The notes under the pieces were generated by a model. That model did no database searches. It worked only from the letters and a program-made list of their open reading frames with translations, and was not told the DNA's origin. Both the position numbers and the translations under genes were made by a program. A DNA stretch of 64,000 bases from Oikopleura dioica (taxonomy: Eukaryota; Animalia; Chordata): positions 16,441,208 to 16,505,207 of the forward strand of contig OU015568.1 of NCBI GenBank assembly GCA_907165135.1, given 5' to 3'. This document shows positions 14,030-20,026 of this stretch, in pieces (within the stretch, counting starts at the first letter, position 1; every line of letters begins with the position of its first letter).

Positions 14030-15440
14030 ATGGGGAGAAGCAGAAGTCGAAGCAGAGGAAGGAAATCAAAGAGAAAGAGCAGAAGAAGGAGTTACAGTAG
14101 TTCCAGTAGCACAAGTTCAGATTCCTCCAGAAGTTCTAGCTCTGATGTCGCCAGGTAAAAAATGGGCTGATTTTTTTTATTTTATTAAGAATATTTTTCG
14201 ATTATTTTCAGGCGCGAAGCTTCGCCGGACGATGCGTACGACCGGGTTGAAAACAGATCTCCAGATCGTGAGCGAGCGCTGGTTCCTGCCTCCGCCGCTG
14301 CCAAATCCGTCGAACACGATCGCCCGCCACCTCAGATGGTCAACGATCCTTACGTAGCCAGAGCTGGAGCGAACTACAAGTAAGCATTCTTTCATTTTAT
14401 CATCTTTTCTTGAAATTAATTCTAGCGGGCCGGAGAAACCGAAAGACAGATGGGTTGCGGATCATCCCTTCGCACACAAGATCGCTGAGCGTGAAGCTAA
14501 TCAACGAGGCGGATTCCGCGGTAGAGGCCGAGGAAGAGGAGCAATGGCGGCGCAACAAAACATGGGAGATATTGCTGCGCGCCGGAGGAATTACACTTGT
14601 GGCGTACCCGATCCACGCGCTCCTAAGGTACGGGAACTGTAATTCTATGAAAAAGATGATGTTCTCTTAAAACGGGGGTATTTCTTTACCCGTGGTATTC
14701 AAATCTGAAAGTCGTAAAAAGCGACGTGGCTCAAGGATGAACAAGGGCACACATGCAAGAACTTTGAGGTCGAATAAGGGTACACATGCAGCCAGTTAAC
14801 GATAAATAAGGATACCTCCTATTTTCTCCTGAAAGGTCATTTTTTTTAATTCAAAGAAATGGATGGTTCGGTCATTATAGAGATACGAATCTATCGTCCT
14901 TTGCGTACGAACAAACCATTTTTTACCTTATTGCCTGAACACCAGGCCTCTACCACCTGGAAATTCGCCTAATATAAAGCTTTCTTGGGACTAGAACGGC
15001 ACTCATAAAATGAATATCAAAAAGATGTATATTTACCATTTCGGCACACTTGTCAATATAAGCTTTTAAAATGAATCCTCTTTTAATTCAGTTATTGCTT
15101 TTGACGTAATGTTAAACGAAAAAAAAACTGACTGAAAAAATCCGAATAAAAAATGTTTTAAATTTAATAAGTGTGAATGTTTTCGTTTGAACCAATCATT
15201 TTTTAGCCTCAAGAACTGACAGGAGTACCAGAACTGGACAAAGTCAAAATCGAGGCGGCAAAAGTAGCAAACCAAACTGACGCAGAAAAATGGAGAAAAG
15301 AGCGAGAAATGCGTTTTGCAAATGAATCCGTTGAGGACAAAGAAAAACGACTTGAAGACAGGGCGAAAAGGAGGAAAGAACGCAAAAAAGCTCGACTTTT
15401 GGAAGAGCAAAAGGAAAAGTTCAAAAATCGAGAAAAATAG
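14030..15440 (+). CDS. RS-rich, RGG-containing, charged coiled-coil protein (possibly the N-terminus of the HPF1-like gene)
   Basis: MGRSRSRSRGRKSKRKSRRRSYSSSSS.., later RGGFRGRGRGRG and ERKKARLLEEQKEKFKNREK. Short GT-AG introns at ~14155-14210 and ~14380-14425. Confidence 0.7.
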
Positions 15441-15465
15441 TTTGAAAAGTCGATTTTTTTTCAAG

Positions 15466-18400
15466 TTTGAACTCATTTCTAAAGCATGTGGCTCGCGTAC
15501 TGCAAAAGCCGCTATCTTTTATCCAAGCAATTATGCGCGGCGAAGTGCCAGAGGATCTCACGGAGGAGCCACCTCCGCCGATCCCGGAAAGGGTTGAGCC
15601 CGTCTTTCATCACAAGTTCAAAGATGCGATGAACCGAGCTTACAGAATCAAGTTCCCGAGGTCGTTCTTCTTGATGTATGAATTCATGCTAGAGCTAAAC
15701 AAAGGTAAGAGAAAATCGCGGCTTTCACGATTTACAACTGATTTTATCGTAAAAGCCGCGGCCGGCTTTCACTTTAAACGATCGAAAATTTTTCGAAAGA
15801 AATAGCCGCACGCGGCTTTTTCCTTATTGATCTTCTAACTCAATATATGTTTAGCCGCACGCGGCTTTTTTCAACAAAATGTTTTTCGGTTTTTAAGCCG
15901 CGCGCGGCTTTATTTTAATTTTTCTTCCAGCAAAATTGATTTTTGTTCCCATGTGATTTTTTTGATTTAAATTTTCGTTCGTTGAATTTTTCGGAAATTA
16001 GATTTCGCGCTGCCATTGCGCCCGGCTCTAAGGAATACCGATGACGGGAGCCACGTGAACTGGATTTCGTAATTTTAGAGGACCCGCTGAATGAACTCGT
16101 CAAAAACGGAATGCAAATGGTCGGTCCTTACGAAGAGCTACACAAGTGCTACACAAACCCTGGCTACTTGCCCGACCCAGAGAAGTGCATCCAAAATCAC
16201 ATGCGCTACAGATATTACTACGACCCGCCGGAACTGCTCGTCTGTATCATTTCCGTGCGCGACCACTGGCATGTCGGCGTCTATAATGACTTGCCGCAAG
16301 AAACCGCGTCCATTTGTGTCTCCAACGATCAGGTACATCCTTAATTAGGAATTACGCAAAGCGTGACATAAACTAGGGAGGTTTGGTTTTGTTCTGGAAG
16401 CAAATAAAATTGGATTGTACAGGGGGATTACCCAAGATTTCATTTTATAAATTTCTTGATTGAAAAGTAAGTGTTTCAAATCTCCTTCATGAAAAGCCGC
16501 GTAGCGGCGTTTTTTGAAAACGAAGACGCGAAGCGGCTTCGCCAGAGTTATCTTTACAGTCTATTTTTAAATTCTTGCGAAGCCGCTCCGCGGCTCCGTT
16601 TTTCTGAAGCCGCTACCCGGCTTTTCATGAGAGATCTTTCAGACTATGATTAAAGTATTCTACAGGATGCTTAGCACAGCTGCTCACGGCTTTTTTCGCC
16701 TAGTTTCGTTGAACTAAAACTTCTCAGTCTCTTACTTTTTCGAAGAATAGTTGGAAAATTCCCTTTTCCGATGACTACAATCTTCAACAGAACTTTGTTT
16801 TTCATGGCCCCTGAAACCGGGGCTTTTTATAAAAATAGACGCCCCGGAAATCTTGACGGAACTTATCCGGCTTTACAGTCGTCCTCTTCCTGTAACATTT
16901 TTCGCAACTCATCTTTTTTATTAATAATTGAAGAAGCTTTCTTCTCAGAATTTTTTCGAAACGAAAGGATTTCCGTGTTGAAAATCCGCCACTATTTTCG
17001 CCGCGGATGACAGCGAATGTATATTCATATTTCATAAAGATTTCCGGATTTCAAGTCTCCGATTTGGAAGGATTATTTGACACCCGTTATCCTCTAAAGA
17101 ATTCTATCCCGATTCCAAGATTTCTTTTTCTAGCGCTAAACTTGCACATTTGAATCAAGACTCGCCAACCTGTGTAAAAAACCTGAGTCAGGATCGTGAA
17201 ACGAAAATAAAGCCGCTCAGCGGCTTTTTAAAGACGAAGCCGCAGCGCGGATTTGCTTAACTACCCATCCCTGTCTAGCTCATTCAGGACCCTGACACAG
17301 GGTTTCTGCACAGGCTACCGAGCTCATCCACGTTTCATGGGATAAATTTGATTCTAGCGCACTGGAGCTATGTACAGTGTAGCAGCAAACATCTTCGGCG
17401 CCGTCAAAATCGTCCTTTATCGTCGAACCCAAACACTTCCTGTACGAACACTGTACGAAGCGCTTATCGAGTACTGCGAGCGGAACGAGATCGATTTCAA
17501 TCGAAAAACACCGGATTTCAAGCGGCGCGATATGCTCATTGTCAATAAAACAGTGAACGAGGTTTGTTCAATTAAATTATCAAATCTCTTTTTAAAACTT
17601 GTTTAGGTCGGATTTGTCATTGAAGATTACAACGGCTTCACAGAAGAGAAGGAACAGGAACTTGTCAATATGCTCAAAACGCTGAAAAATTCACATAATG
17701 ATGGGCTCATACAGATGCATCTCAAGGTAAAGTTACTAATAAGAGACAGATTTTCAGCCTCTGAAATAAGGGGCTCGAAAGAAAGCTGGGAATCTGAGGT
17801 TGAAAGAATAAAAACGACGCTTTTATAGGACATTGGAAGCTTCGTTTATTATTTTAACATTTTTTGACAATGAAAATTAACAATACTTTAAGACCGATTG
17901 TTGTATCTCAAGTTGTGTGCATTTTAAAATATTTTTTTGAGTCTCTGCTTTATTTTATACTGAGTTCTATTCTCGACCGTAAAATTTGAAGTAGATAGAG
18001 CGGAAAAATTTTTACGCAGATTTTGCCAATCGAGTGGAAAGATGGCCTCGATTCGGTTCTTCCACCTGCAAAATTTCCGATATAAAAAGCGAACTTTCTG
18101 AAGGAAAGAATAAAATATGTCAAATGAAACAACTCCAAAGATTTTAGTGCATTGATATCTTAAAAAATACTTAGAAATAAAATGAAGCGAATACTCTTCT
18201 GTAGTAATTAAAAATTGGACGACCTTTTTCCCTTTCTAGGCTCTTTTTCACTGACGTCATTGAAATTATAAATAAACTATGAATTCAAATTTTCTTTCGT
18301 CTAATTTTGAACTAAAAAATTGATTTTTTCTACAAATTCTTCCCCATTATTACTCATTTTTCTCCTAGCCGATCAAAGACCTGTACTACCAAGCAATGAA

Positions 18401-20026
18401 AGAGTGCGACGCCGGAAACCCTGGCATGGCACTTGAAGTTGGTCTAAGCTTGTTTGCCGATGGCAGCCCGTGCTTAGCTGATCTCACGCGGTCAGTGTTA
18501 TTTAAAAATTGCATGTTTTGACGAATTGTTTCAGTCAATTATTAGTATCAGCATACACAAGGTGCGATCGTGATCTCTTCGCCGAAATTATCGACGCTCA
18601 CCTGAAAGATCGCCGAAAGACTTTAGGTAAACTCGTTTTAGAAATTCATTATCAATTGTTCAAAAATACTGATGTAACAGAGAGACCCTTCGCTCTTGGG
18701 TCATCAACCTGTGTAGAAAACCTGAGTCAGGTCCTGAAAGATCTCAAGCGAAAAGCCGCGCAGCGGCTTTTATAAAACTAATCCGCGAAGCGGCTTCGGA
18801 AGAATCTGAAAATTGAGTCGATAGGATATGTGGCGAAGCCGCTTTGCGGCTTCGTTTAGAGAAAAGCCGCTACGCGGCTTTTCATTTGAGATCTTTCAGA
18901 CCCTGACTCAGGCTTTGTGCACCGGTCGCCGAGCCCAATTTCCTCTAAATTGTCGATTTTTCTGAACTGATTTTCATCGTCATTTTCAGTTTCTCGTCTG
19001 GACCTGAGCGGCTCGATAACTTTCGCCAGTGTTCCAACAATGACTGGTCCCGCTTACGATAAAACCGCGGTCGGAGAAGAGCCAAAGGAACTATCAGTCC
19101 AGGACCGATTAGAAATGATCAAGGCGGGAGTTGAACCCGAACCTGTCAAGCCGAAATGGGAAGGAACGAAAATCGTCAAGTAAGTTTTGATAGAAACATG
19201 AAGGGGGCATTTTGTGGCGCGTCTAAAAGGGCTTTTAAAATTTCTTAGTCACGTTTTTACTGCGAAAATAGGCTTTTCACTTGCAAATATCTAAGGCTCT
19301 CCCGAAATCTGGGTTCGGCAACCTGTGTAGAAAACCTAAGTCAGGGTCTGATTGAGCTAAAATAAAAAGCCGCTACGACAATCGAGCCCGCGAAGCGGCT
19401 TCGCAAATATTACAATTCCGGTCTATTATAAAATTCTTGCGAAGCCGCTACGCGGCTTTTCGCTTTCACTCTTTCCGGCCCAAATTTAGTTTTTCTACAC
19501 AGCCGACTTTAGTCCCAACTTTCAAAGGGTTTTCGACTCGAAAAAGGGCCAAAAGTTGATGCTCTCCCCAAAATTAATTATAAGAACTTGATTTTGCCGA
19601 AAACTTTTCAAAAATTTTGGACTGGCATAGTCAAGTTCTGATCATCAATTTTGGGGAGAGCATCTAGTTTTGGCTCTCTTTCAAGGTCGGAAAATGCCCC
19701 GCAAATGGTCCTTGTCCACATGTGCGTGATATGTTAAGATTTTCTCCGATTTTCCTTCAATTTCACGCCGCATTTTTGCGATTTGACTTCAAGGAAGTGT
19801 AAAAATTAACATTTGTGTTAGAACTGGCACGAAGAAATTCGGCGGCTTCGGCTCTGGCGGCCGTCGAGATGCGTTGAAACTCGCCCAAGCGCGCAAGGAA
19901 AAGCAAGAAAAGCTCAAGCAACAAGCTGGTGCTGCGGAAACCGCCGCTGGAGAAGGTGGAAAGCCAGCGAAAAAGGAACGTGTTTCGAAGTGGGGAGCCA
20001 AAGCTGGCGGGGGCGCCGACTGGTGA
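15466..20026 (+). CDS. HPF1: Histone PARylation factor 1 (HPF1)-like protein with C-terminal extension
   Basis: AYRIKFPRSFFLMYEF..GMQMVGPYEEL..HMRYRYYYDPPELL..HVGVYNDLP..NIFGAVK..GMALEVGLSLFADGS..AYTRCDRDLFAEIIDAHLKDR matches HPF1 (LPEDFYHFW..LQLVGPYDIL..HWRFYYDPPEF..GLELGMDLF..LFAEIIEEHL). About 9 exons, then a tail ending KWGAKAGGGADW*. Confidence 0.88.

What the first reader, a model, noticed from the sequence alone, without database searches (positions are those of the whole stretch)
17606..18480. HPF1-like protein appears to have lost its catalytic and PARP-binding residues
Human HPF1 uses Y238/R239 (GYRE) and D283/E284 (ANDECDYGMGLE); E284 is the catalytic base for serine ADP-ribosylation (established). 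Here GYRE reads GFTE. The ungapped alignment PIKDLYYQAMKECDAGNPGMALEVG puts D/A at 283/284, equivalent to E284A; a gapped alternative keeps E but gives D283K. Either way the active-site contribution is altered while the fold motifs are kept. This suggests a pseudo-enzyme, a PARP modulator or a repurposed paralogue (inference from a remembered alignment).
Basis: partly seen in the sequence, partly recalled or inferred. Interest (0 to 1): 0.75.

Follow-up and report, generated by a model that had tools for sequence, protein, structure and literature searches.

The report
Catalytically disarmed HPF1 paralogue in Oikopleura
This tunicate gene is a well-conserved, expressed extra copy of the PARP cofactor HPF1 that keeps the fold but has lost the glutamate needed for serine ADP-ribosylation, while a normal HPF1 sits elsewhere in the same genome.

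Summary
Window 17634-17645 reads G-F-T-E where HPF1 has G-Y-R-E. Window 18408-18425 reads D-A-G-N-P-G where HPF1 has D283-E284-x-D286-x-G288.

Four tests favour the ungapped register (Asp = D283, Ala = E284):
- a full-length MAFFT alignment;
- a HMMER profile built from 86 canonical HPF1s;
- matching helix and loop boundaries in AlphaFold models of a C-lineage orthologue and a canonical copy;
- variation among C-lineage relatives.

So the R239/E284/D286 salt-bridge triad reads T/A/N, while D283, the residue whose D283H change abolishes PARP1 binding, is kept.

The gene is much larger than the flagged stretch: 12 exons, 14030-20026, 702 aa. An RS/RGG-rich N-terminus is spliced in frame to the HPF1 domain, and a tail ends in GGGADW. 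It is not decaying. dN/dS against a sister-lineage cDNA is 0.025, and RNA reads confirm several splice joints.

The genome (Oikopleura dioica complex, inferred) holds three HPF1 copies. One, on C4, is fully canonical. It also has PARP1, a PARP2-like gene and two PARG copies, and gives no ARH3 match.

Best reading: a non-catalytic HPF1 paralogue, probably a PARP modulator or repurposed adaptor. Whether it binds PARP is untested. Similar unstudied HPF1-like proteins exist in a lobster and a tardigrade.

The parts
14030..20026 (+). Whole gene: 12 exons, 2109-nt CDS, 702 aa. It has three parts: an RS/RGG-rich N-terminus, an HPF1 domain and a Lys/Ala-rich tail.
   Evidence: Open CDS with one terminal stop. 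Exon joins are matched by database proteins P0034, P0021, P0024 and P0022 and by RNA joints.
14030..14154 (+). Exon 1: ATG and an Arg/Ser-rich start (MGRSRSRSRGRKSKRK...).
   Evidence: Its join to exon 2 reproduces the sequence of the O. dioica-labelled protein P0034 by eye; the tblastn did not cover this low-complexity part.
14212..14379 (+). Exon 2 of the N-terminal region.
   Evidence: P0034 tblastn. Donor at 14379 is seen as an RNA joint.
14426..14627 (+). Exon 3, containing the RGG box (GGFRGRGRGRG).
15207..15413 (+). Exon 4, a Lys/Glu/Arg-rich stretch ending ...LLEEQK.
15414..15484 (+). 71-nt intron with non-canonical GA..AG ends. It joins the RS/RGG part in frame to the HPF1 domain.
   Evidence: The junction ...EEQK|HVARV... 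is reproduced in P0021, P0024 and P0034. GA-AG introns are frequent in O. dioica (PMC7072748). No RNA read of this strain covered the junction.
15485..15704 (+). Exon 5: start of the HPF1 domain. An internal ATG at 15533 could serve a trans-spliced or operon form.
   Evidence: An RNA loose end carries the join to the next exon.
16079..16332 (+). Exon 6: HPF1 N-terminal core (MVGPYEEL..., RYYYDPPE).
   Evidence: Pfam PF10228 49.5 bits against a cut-off of 27.1. Matches PDB HPF1 chains.
17358..17561 (+). Exon 7.
   Evidence: GT-AG ends. P0025 is 100% identical over it.
17607..17726 (+). Exon 8: the shortened alpha6-alpha7 loop and helix alpha7.
17634..17642 (+). G-F-T in place of G237-Y238-R239.
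   Evidence: Alignments. Y-N-G-F-T-[E/D] is invariant in at least 8 C-lineage fragments.
18369..18490 (+). Exon 9: helix alpha9, the active-centre loop and helix alpha10.
   Evidence: RNA joint 18490>18535. 11 differences from the sister lineage: 10 synonymous plus D>E.
18402..18404 (+). It aligns with A281 inside helix alpha9.
   Evidence: It is K or Q in relatives. Helix boundaries from the models.
18408..18425 (+). Loop D-A-G-N-P-G, equivalent to D283-E284-C285-D286-Y287-G288. D283 is kept, E284 is Ala and D286 is Asn.
18535..18626 (+). Exon 10: C-terminal HPF1 helices (...DLFAEIIDAHLKDRRKTL).
   Evidence: RNA joints on both sides. All 7 differences are synonymous.
18990..19179 (+). Exon 11: linker and tail.
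   Evidence: RNA joint 18626>~18990 with the diverged exon start between the two sides. P0022 matches.
19822..20026 (+). Exon 12: Lys/Ala-rich predicted helix and the C-terminus GGGADW (20006-20023), then stop.
   Evidence: P0022 reproduces the exon 11/12 join. The tail motif is shared by all three paralogues.

Best explanation
The window encodes an appendicularian-specific paralogue of HPF1, called copy C here. It keeps the HPF1 fold, but its active-centre triad R239/E284/D286 reads T/A/N and its alpha6-alpha7 loop is 5 residues shorter than in human HPF1. It therefore cannot supply the catalytic glutamate that lets PARP1/2 modify serines. That job is most likely done by the canonical HPF1 on contig C4.

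Shown: copy C is expressed, correctly spliced and tightly constrained. It carries an RS/RGG-rich N-terminal region fused in frame to the HPF1 domain.

Inferred: it acts as a non-catalytic HPF1-like factor. The most likely mode is docking on PARP1/2 through the retained D283 and a hydrophobic residue at position 268. It would then behave like the human E284A and R239A mutants, giving no histone Ser-ADP-ribosylation and altered PARP automodification. The RS/RGG part would tether it to RNA, poly(ADP-ribose) or chromatin. It would thus compete with, or redirect, the canonical cofactor.
For: - Family and fold: Pfam HPF1 over cut-off. 205 bits against a profile of 86 canonical HPF1s. The AlphaFold model of the 89.7% identical orthologue P0022 has pLDDT 84-97 over the domain, and its 12 best PDB matches are all HPF1.
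- Register: L-INS-i, MAFFT on 141 sequences and HMMER all put D/A at 283/284. In both models a helix ends at that Asp, a 4-residue loop follows, and the next helix starts at the G288 equivalent. D-A-G-N-P-G matches the common canonical variant D-E-G-D-P-G at 4 of 6 positions.
- Family invariance: G-Y-R and D-E-x-D are near-invariant in about 110 diverse HPF1s.
- Constraint: dN/dS is 0.025 over 165 domain codons at dS about 0.93. 21 of 22 RNA-seen differences are synonymous. Y-N-G-F-T and P-G-M-A-L-E are invariant in the C lineage.
- Expression and splicing.
- Canonical copy present: C4:8866802-8867656, with GYR and NDECD intact.
- Partners present: PARP1 and a PARP2-like gene with the H826 equivalent and a C-terminal Trp.
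- Mutant behaviour in human HPF1: E284A gives no H3 modification and binds about 3-5 fold tighter. R239A still binds and restores PARP1 automodification. D283H and F268S abolish binding (PMC7884425).
Against: - No binding or activity data exist. The one complex prediction gave no answer.
- F280>K and K307>D change two of the five interface I contacts. F280A and K307S weaken human binding 4-6 fold, so PARP docking may be lost or retargeted.
- In most other C-lineage species position 284 is Asp or Glu, so some acid-base capacity may persist in relatives.
- The HMMER posterior in the alpha9 stretch is only about 0.6-0.7.
- Pfam on exon 9 alone preferred a 3-residue insertion.
- The models are of an orthologue, not of the window protein itself, and only secondary-structure boundaries could be compared, not coordinates.
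Confidence: 0.6

Rival explanations
1. Repurposed scaffold. Copy C no longer binds PARP1/2, and its conserved HPF1 fold serves another partner. The RS/RGG region would then place it in RNA processing or another chromatin pathway.
For: F280>K and K307>D are invariant within the C lineage but unlike canonical HPF1, and the whole active-centre triad is gone. The RS/RGG N-terminus is fused in frame, and paralogue B also has an RS-rich N-terminus. The long stem branch of 1.52 substitutions per site followed by tight constraint is the pattern expected for a new function.
Against: D283, the residue whose D283H change abolishes PARP1 binding, is invariant in every C-lineage sequence. The loop scaffold P-G-M-A-L-E (E292 kept) is also invariant. 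Position 268 stays hydrophobic. No alternative partner is indicated by any result.
Confidence: 0.25
2. Still a working Ser-ADP-ribosylation cofactor. Another acidic residue, such as the K-E Glu at 18402-18404 or the retained Asp, would take over as catalytic base in a remodelled loop.
For: The gapped alignment gives an exact E-C-D match, and Pfam on that exon alone implies a 3-residue insertion. The surface around the loop remains acidic. Relatives carry D or E at position 284.
Against: The K-E Glu is K or Q in other C-lineage species and sits inside helix alpha9, aligned with A281. R239 and D286, which position E284, are both gone. Human E284A abolishes H3 modification. A canonical copy exists to do this job.
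Confidence: 0.1
3. Decaying duplicate (pseudogene), or an artefact of alignment or sequence.
For: Loss of otherwise invariant residues is what a pseudogene would show.
Against: The CDS is an intact 702 codons across 12 exons. dN/dS is 0.025. Spliced RNA is present. Orthologues occur in several appendicularian lineages. The same Ala codon is seen in independent RNA.
Confidence: 0.02

Closest known systems
Human HPF1 (C4orf27); structures 6M3G, 6M3I, 6TX2, 6TX3
   Same: Same Pfam family (PF10228) and the same fold. The model of the orthologue matches these chains best. D283, E292, G288-M289 and the C-terminal helices are conserved.
   Different: Y238>F, R239>T, E284>A, D286>N, F280>K and K307>D. 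The alpha6-alpha7 loop is 5 residues shorter. An RS/RGG-rich N-terminus of about 250 aa and a tail of about 130 aa are added.
Engineered human HPF1 E284A and R239A mutants (PMC7884425)
   Same: Copy C naturally combines substitutions at the same two positions. The mutants still bind PARP1 (E284A more tightly). E284A loses histone H3 serine modification, and R239A restores PARP1 automodification.
   Different: These are single substitutions in an otherwise canonical protein. Copy C also changes D286, F280, K307 and the loop length, so the mutants' behaviour may not carry over.
This genome's own canonical HPF1 (paralogue A, G000:C4:8866802-8867656, minus strand; orthologues P0033, P0037)
   Same: Same clade (SH-aLRT 98), a similar exon layout and the same C-terminal GGxxDW-type tail.
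   Different: Paralogue A keeps G-Y-R and N-D-E-C-D intact and has no RS/RGG N-terminus.
Unstudied 'histone PARylation factor 1-like' proteins of Homarus americanus (XP_042206072.1) and Paramacrobiotus metropolitanus (XP_055343406.1)
   Same: Both are divergent HPF1 family members that have lost G-Y-R. The lobster protein reads Y-D-A-D-D, with D283 kept and E284>A as here.
   Different: They have independent origins: neither groups with the appendicularian copies in the quick tree. Neither has an RS/RGG extension. No literature on them was found.

Membership tests
HPF1 protein family (Pfam PF10228) | Significant match to the family profile | tested here: met
   Exon 6 alone scores 49.5 bits against a cut-off of 27.1. 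The own-genome scan gives 46.7 bits. The spliced model scores 205 bits against an independent profile of 86 canonical HPF1s.
HPF1 protein family (Pfam PF10228) | HPF1 three-dimensional fold | tested here: met
   The AlphaFold model of orthologue P0022 (89.7% identical, identical motif segments) gives HPF1 structures as its 12 best PDB matches, probability 1.00. It covers the C-terminal two thirds of the domain only.
Functional HPF1 cofactor (completes the PARP1/2 active site) | Catalytic Glu at position 284 | tested here: not met
   Ala (GCC, 18411-18413) in the register supported. The Glu is near-invariant in about 110 family members.
Functional HPF1 cofactor (completes the PARP1/2 active site) | Y238-R239 with D286: the salt-bridge and packing network that positions E284 and stiffens the alpha6-alpha7 loop | tested here: not met
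   F-T at 17637-17642 and Asn at position 286. The loop is shortened by 5 residues.
Functional HPF1 cofactor (completes the PARP1/2 active site) | Asp283, essential for PARP1 binding (D283H abolishes it) | tested here: met
   Asp at 18408-18410, invariant in all C-lineage sequences. In both models it is the last helix residue.
Functional HPF1 cofactor (completes the PARP1/2 active site) | Other interface I contacts: F268, F280, C285 and K307 | tested here: inconclusive
   268 is Leu (hydrophobic, within family variation). 280 is Lys (the family is always hydrophobic there). 285 is Gly (common in the family). 307 is Asp (a variable position in the family)..
Functional HPF1 cofactor (completes the PARP1/2 active site) | Physical binding to the PARP1/2 ART domain | tested here: inconclusive
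   The complex prediction returned 'no answer': score 0.00, alignments not used, partner fold uncertain. This is not evidence either way.
Functional HPF1 cofactor (completes the PARP1/2 active site) | Supports serine ADP-ribosylation | not testable with these tools
   Needs a biochemical assay.

The most novel reading that the evidence does not exclude
Copy C is a natural separation-of-function HPF1. It would be an RS/RGG-tethered, catalytically dead paralogue that still docks on PARP1/2 and switches their output. It could do this by blocking serine modification and chain elongation, or by directing PARP to RNA or RNP-bound sites. It would form part of an expanded PARP-HPF1-PARG toolkit (3 HPF1, at least 3 PARP1/2/3-type genes, 2 PARG, no ARH3 match) in a chordate that has lost classical NHEJ. 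HPF1 pseudo-cofactors would then be a recurrent regulatory device, since a lobster and a tardigrade also have them.
Probability: 0.25. Interest if true: 0.75.

Novelty: new variant of a known kind. Interest (0 to 1): 0.55.

Why it matters
HPF1 is treated as a single-copy, near-universally conserved animal cofactor whose Glu284 defines DNA-damage-induced serine ADP-ribosylation. This genome has three copies, and one of them is strongly constrained yet lacks that Glu and its positioning partners. That makes it a natural experiment on what the HPF1 fold does apart from catalysis. It could be PARP shielding, competition with the active cofactor, or a new role linked to an RS/RGG domain.

The setting is also unusual. 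The organism lacks classical NHEJ (PMC6635534), the genome gave no ARH3 match, and PARG is duplicated. The Drosophila study (PMC10238386) linked ARH3 loss to PARG taking over serine-ADPr removal. The result would matter mainly to ADP-ribosylation and tunicate genome biologists.

Tried and rejected
- **Exon-only PDB searches.** Exons 8 and 9 (40 aa each) found nothing; they are too short.
- **MAFFT with exons as fragment rows.** This gave the gapped K-E-C-D register. I rejected it as unreliable because full-length alignment, HMMER, the models and lineage variation all disagree with it.
- **Complex prediction.** P0022 residues 1-170 with the ART domain of an appendicularian PARP2-like protein (P0196 residues 196-422) returned 'no answer'. 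The score was 0.00, the engine ignored my alignments, and the partner's fold was uncertain. It is not evidence for or against binding.
- **RNA reads.** The runs come from a diverged lineage (exons 90-95% alike). Exons 7-8 and the GA..AG junction received no reads at 90% likeness or better, so the fusion junction is unconfirmed for this strain.
- **Careful tree.** It did not finish in time, so only the quick tree is used. The order among paralogues A, B and C is unresolved, and the tool flagged long branches.
- **Pseudogene reading.** Rejected.
- **Joined model.** Exons were searched by reference, and the database orthologue P0022 served as proxy for folding. The joined model was used only inside sandbox scripts, for alignment, dN/dS and HMMER.
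Full report
**What is at the coordinates.** The window is eukaryotic, with short ORFs and GT-AG introns. The flagged stretch 17606-18480 holds two exons of an HPF1-like gene. Exon 17607-17726 reads VGFVIEDYNGFTEE..., and exon 18369-18490 reads PIKDLYYQAMKECDAGNPGMALEVG.... A neighbouring exon (16079-16332) matches Pfam HPF1 (PF10228) at 49.5 bits against a cut-off of 27.1. It also hits the solved HPF1 chains of Nematostella and human. Human numbering was checked with a tool alignment to the full-length chain 6m3g_A, which gives G237-Y238-R239 and N282-D283-E284-C285-D286.

**Gene model.** The gene is far larger than the flagged stretch: 12 exons, 14030-20026, 2109 nt and 702 aa. Ten of its eleven introns are GT-AG. 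The exception is a GA..AG intron (15414-15484), which joins an Arg/Ser- and RGG-rich N-terminal region of about 250 aa in frame to the HPF1 domain.

- The junction (...EEQK|HVARV...) is reproduced by three database proteins. One is labelled 'unnamed protein product, partial [Oikopleura dioica]' (P0034). The other two come from intron-less contigs (P0021, P0024).
- GA-AG introns are documented as frequent in O. dioica (PMC7072748).
- P0022, an 89.7% identical orthologue from a JGI contig, reproduces every join from exon 7 to exon 12.
- RNA-seq of the same species label comes from a diverged lineage (exons 90-95% alike). It shows the joints 18490>18535 and 18626>~18990, and loose ends carrying the 15704>16079 and 17726>18369 joins.
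- An internal ATG at 15533 could serve a shorter, trans-spliced form. This was not tested.

**Organism and genomic context.** The assembly has 64.28 Mb in 19 contigs. The closest named proteins are O. dioica and ascidian HPF1s. I infer a member of the O. dioica species complex.

A six-frame scan of the whole assembly with PF10228 finds three HPF1 loci:
- **A**, at C4:8866802-8867656 (minus strand), reads IGYRPLE and LANDECDFGMGLEFG, so it is fully canonical. Full-length orthologues are P0033 and P0037.
- **B**, at C1:13396908-13397805, reads IGYTLDE and VNEEDGKVDGAILGMEFG. It also carries an RS-rich N-terminus in the same frame as its first HPF1 exon.
- **C** is the window copy.

The genome also has:
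- a PARP1 with two zf-PARP fingers, WGR, HD and ART, ending ...ETLPW;
- a PARP2-like gene ending ...SECPW;
- a tandem PARP3-like pair whose first domain lacks the C-terminal Trp;
- two tandem PARG genes;
- no match to the ARH3 family PF03747.

Four independent tests favour the ungapped one (Asp = D283, Ala = E284).

1. L-INS-i on full-length sequences and MAFFT on 141 sequences give it.
2. HMMER gives it. The profile was built only from 86 canonical, non-appendicularian HPF1s, and the alignment scored 205 bits. The posterior in that stretch is about 0.6-0.7, rising to 0.99 from G-M onward.
3. AlphaFold models agree.
   - In the C-lineage orthologue P0022 (pLDDT 84-97 over the domain), a helix ends at the Asp of K-E-C-D. 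A four-residue loop A-G-N-P follows, and the next helix starts at the Gly of G-M-A-L-E.
   - In the canonical P0033 (pLDDT above 90), the helix ends at D283, the loop is E-C-D-F and the next helix starts at G288.
   - The local architecture is identical with no shift.
4. Family variation agrees.
   - Across about 110 diverse HPF1s, a common canonical variant is D-E-G-D-P-G. The window's D-A-G-N-P-G matches it at 4 of 6 positions and differs exactly at E284 and D286.
   - Other C-lineage fragments read D-D-D-K-P-G, D-D-D-R-P-G, D-E-D-K-P-G, D-D-D-S-P-G and D-D-G-R-P-G. So D283 is invariant, while position 284 is A, D or E.
   - The Glu of 'K-E', the gapped candidate, becomes K or Q in relatives.

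Two results pointed the other way: the fragment-row MAFFT alignment, and the Pfam hit on that exon alone, which placed 30 residues on 27 profile positions. I regard both as artefacts of aligning a 40-residue piece.

**What has changed, and what it means in the light of solved structures.** Sun et al. 2021 (PMC7884425) report the following.
- R239 does not touch PARP1. It salt-bridges E284 and D286, positions the catalytic Glu and stiffens the long alpha6-alpha7 loop.
- Y238 packs on V218 and hydrogen-bonds E292.
- Interface I consists of F268, F280, D283, C285 and K307.
- F268S and D283H abolish binding.
- E284A binds more tightly (0.3 against 1.5 uM) but gives no H3 modification.
- R239A still binds and restores PARP1 automodification.

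In copy C the whole triad is neutralised: R239>T, E284>A and D286>N. Y238 is Phe, and the alpha6-alpha7 loop is 5 residues shorter than in human (9 shorter than in paralogue A). Helix alpha7 begins directly after the Thr. D283 and E292 are kept and position 268 is Leu. F280 is Lys and K307 is Asp, both invariant within the lineage. So the catalytic contribution is gone. The PARP-binding surface is partly kept and partly remodelled.

**Is it functional?** Yes.
- Nei-Gojobori dN/dS between the window CDS and the sister-lineage cDNA (L016) is 0.025 over the 165 aligned HPF1-domain codons, at dS about 0.93. It is 0.083 in the tail.
- All 22 differences that the read table lists in exons 6, 9 and 10 are synonymous except one, D>E.
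- Y-N-G-F-T-[E/D] is invariant in at least 8 distinct C-lineage fragments from marine metagenomes and transcriptomes.
- In a quick ML tree the three appendicularian paralogues form one clade (SH-aLRT 98). The C stem is long (1.52 substitutions per site) and its tips are short (0.11-0.33): a burst of change followed by constraint. The tool flagged long branches, and the order among A, B and C is unresolved.

**Mechanism.**
- *Shown:* an expressed, constrained HPF1-fold protein without the catalytic Glu, alongside a canonical HPF1 and plausible PARP1/2 partners.
- *Inferred:* it is a non-catalytic HPF1-like factor. I favour a PARP1/2 modulator that docks through the retained Asp and the hydrophobic residue at position 268 and behaves like the E284A and R239A mutants. 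Its RS/RGG region would tether it to RNA, PAR or chromatin.
- *Main rival:* it has left PARP altogether and is a repurposed scaffold.
- A residual catalytic role is unlikely, and a pseudogene is excluded. The single complex prediction gave no answer and is not used.

**Novelty.** No paper in the searchable library links Oikopleura and HPF1 in a relevant way. The published HPF1 phylogeny covers Ciona and Styela but not Oikopleura. The exhaustive search (292 family members) shows the C type only in unnamed marine fragments related to this gene. It also reveals independent divergent 'HPF1-like' proteins in a lobster (G-Y-R lost, Y-D-A-D-D) and a tardigrade. I therefore class this as a new variant of a known kind rather than something categorically new.

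Two pieces of context from the literature apply. O. dioica lacks Ku70/80 and classical NHEJ (PMC6635534). ARH3-less animals can use PARG to remove serine-ADPr (PMC10238386).

**Limits.**
- By rule, the spliced model was never sent to a search, fold or complex tool. Exons were searched by reference, and the orthologue P0022 (identical in both motif segments) stood in for folding.
- P0022 lacks the N-terminal third of the HPF1 domain.
- Only secondary-structure boundaries could be compared, not coordinates.
- ARH3 absence rests on one exon-wise profile scan.

Noticed in passing
G000:C1:13396908-13397805 (L002/L004): A third HPF1-like paralogue (B). It reads G-Y-T instead of G-Y-R and has a remodelled, longer loop (N-E-E-D-G-K-V-D-G-A-I-L-G-M-E-F-G). 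An Arg/Ser/Asp-rich N-terminus lies in the same open frame as its first HPF1 exon. Its branch is very long (1.92), and no orthologue appeared among the 150 best hits of the big search.
   Followed up: partly
window 20006-20023; L001 and L002 C-termini: All three paralogues, and their orthologues P0033, P0037, P0022, P0023 and P0039, end in a similar motif: G-G-x-x-D-W, optionally followed by G or N. Ascidian and vertebrate HPF1s end soon after the HPF1 domain and lack it. PARP1/2 bind HPF1 through their own C-terminal ...L-W, so a mimic or self-docking role is conceivable. This was not tested.
   Followed up: no
G000:C1:14471014-14473481; whole genome: Two tandem PARG catalytic domains, and no match anywhere to the ARH3 family PF03747. 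This is the same combination (HPF1 present, ARH3 absent, PARG duplicated or adapted) discussed for Drosophila and other lineages in PMC10238386.
   Followed up: partly
G000:C1:12928037-12931404 (L006) and C1:3897104-3898550 (L008): PARP1 and the PARP2-like gene end in ...T-L-P-W and ...E-C-P-W. Most PARP1/2 fetched here end in S/Q-L-W (48 sequences). The residue before the terminal Trp is Pro, so the HPF1-binding C-terminus is itself unusual in this genome.
   Followed up: no
G000:C1:14160328-14162218 (L007): Two PARP catalytic domains in tandem, preceded by an HD region. No WGR hit was found, and the first domain ends ...KFNFN, without a C-terminal Trp (PARP3-like). The second domain's end was not determined.
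   Followed up: no
window introns and flanks, e.g. 15800-15915, 16485-16625, 17205-17250, 18745-18880, 19340-19450: Many copies of short palindromic GC hairpins (AAGCCGC-nn-GCGGCTT). Some lie near a recurring motif CCTGTGTA(G/A)AAAACCT(G/A)AGTCAGG (near 17170, 18710 and 19335). These look like MITE-like elements filling the larger introns of this gene.
   Followed up: no
L017 (TARA metagenome scaffold, gene 155-1261): In a relative about 60% identical, the part of the same gene that is present reads as one continuous ORF on genomic DNA. It has a single in-frame 38-codon insert where this genome has an intron (17727-18368). This genome splits the corresponding part into 7 exons, so intron content differs sharply between appendicularian lineages.
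   Followed up: no
window 15486-15632: An out-of-frame upstream ATG at 15486, just after the AG at 15483-15484, opens a 49-codon ORF that overlaps the in-frame ATG at 15533. If a trans-spliced short form exists, this would act as an upstream ORF.
   Followed up: no
P0087 (Homarus americanus XP_042206072.1), P0135 (Paramacrobiotus metropolitanus XP_055343406.1), P0099/P0143/P0168 (unnamed): Other HPF1 family members have lost G-Y-R, D-E-x-D or both. P0168 carries C-terminal leucine-rich-repeat-like sequence. Disarmed HPF1-like proteins seem to have arisen repeatedly.
   Followed up: partly
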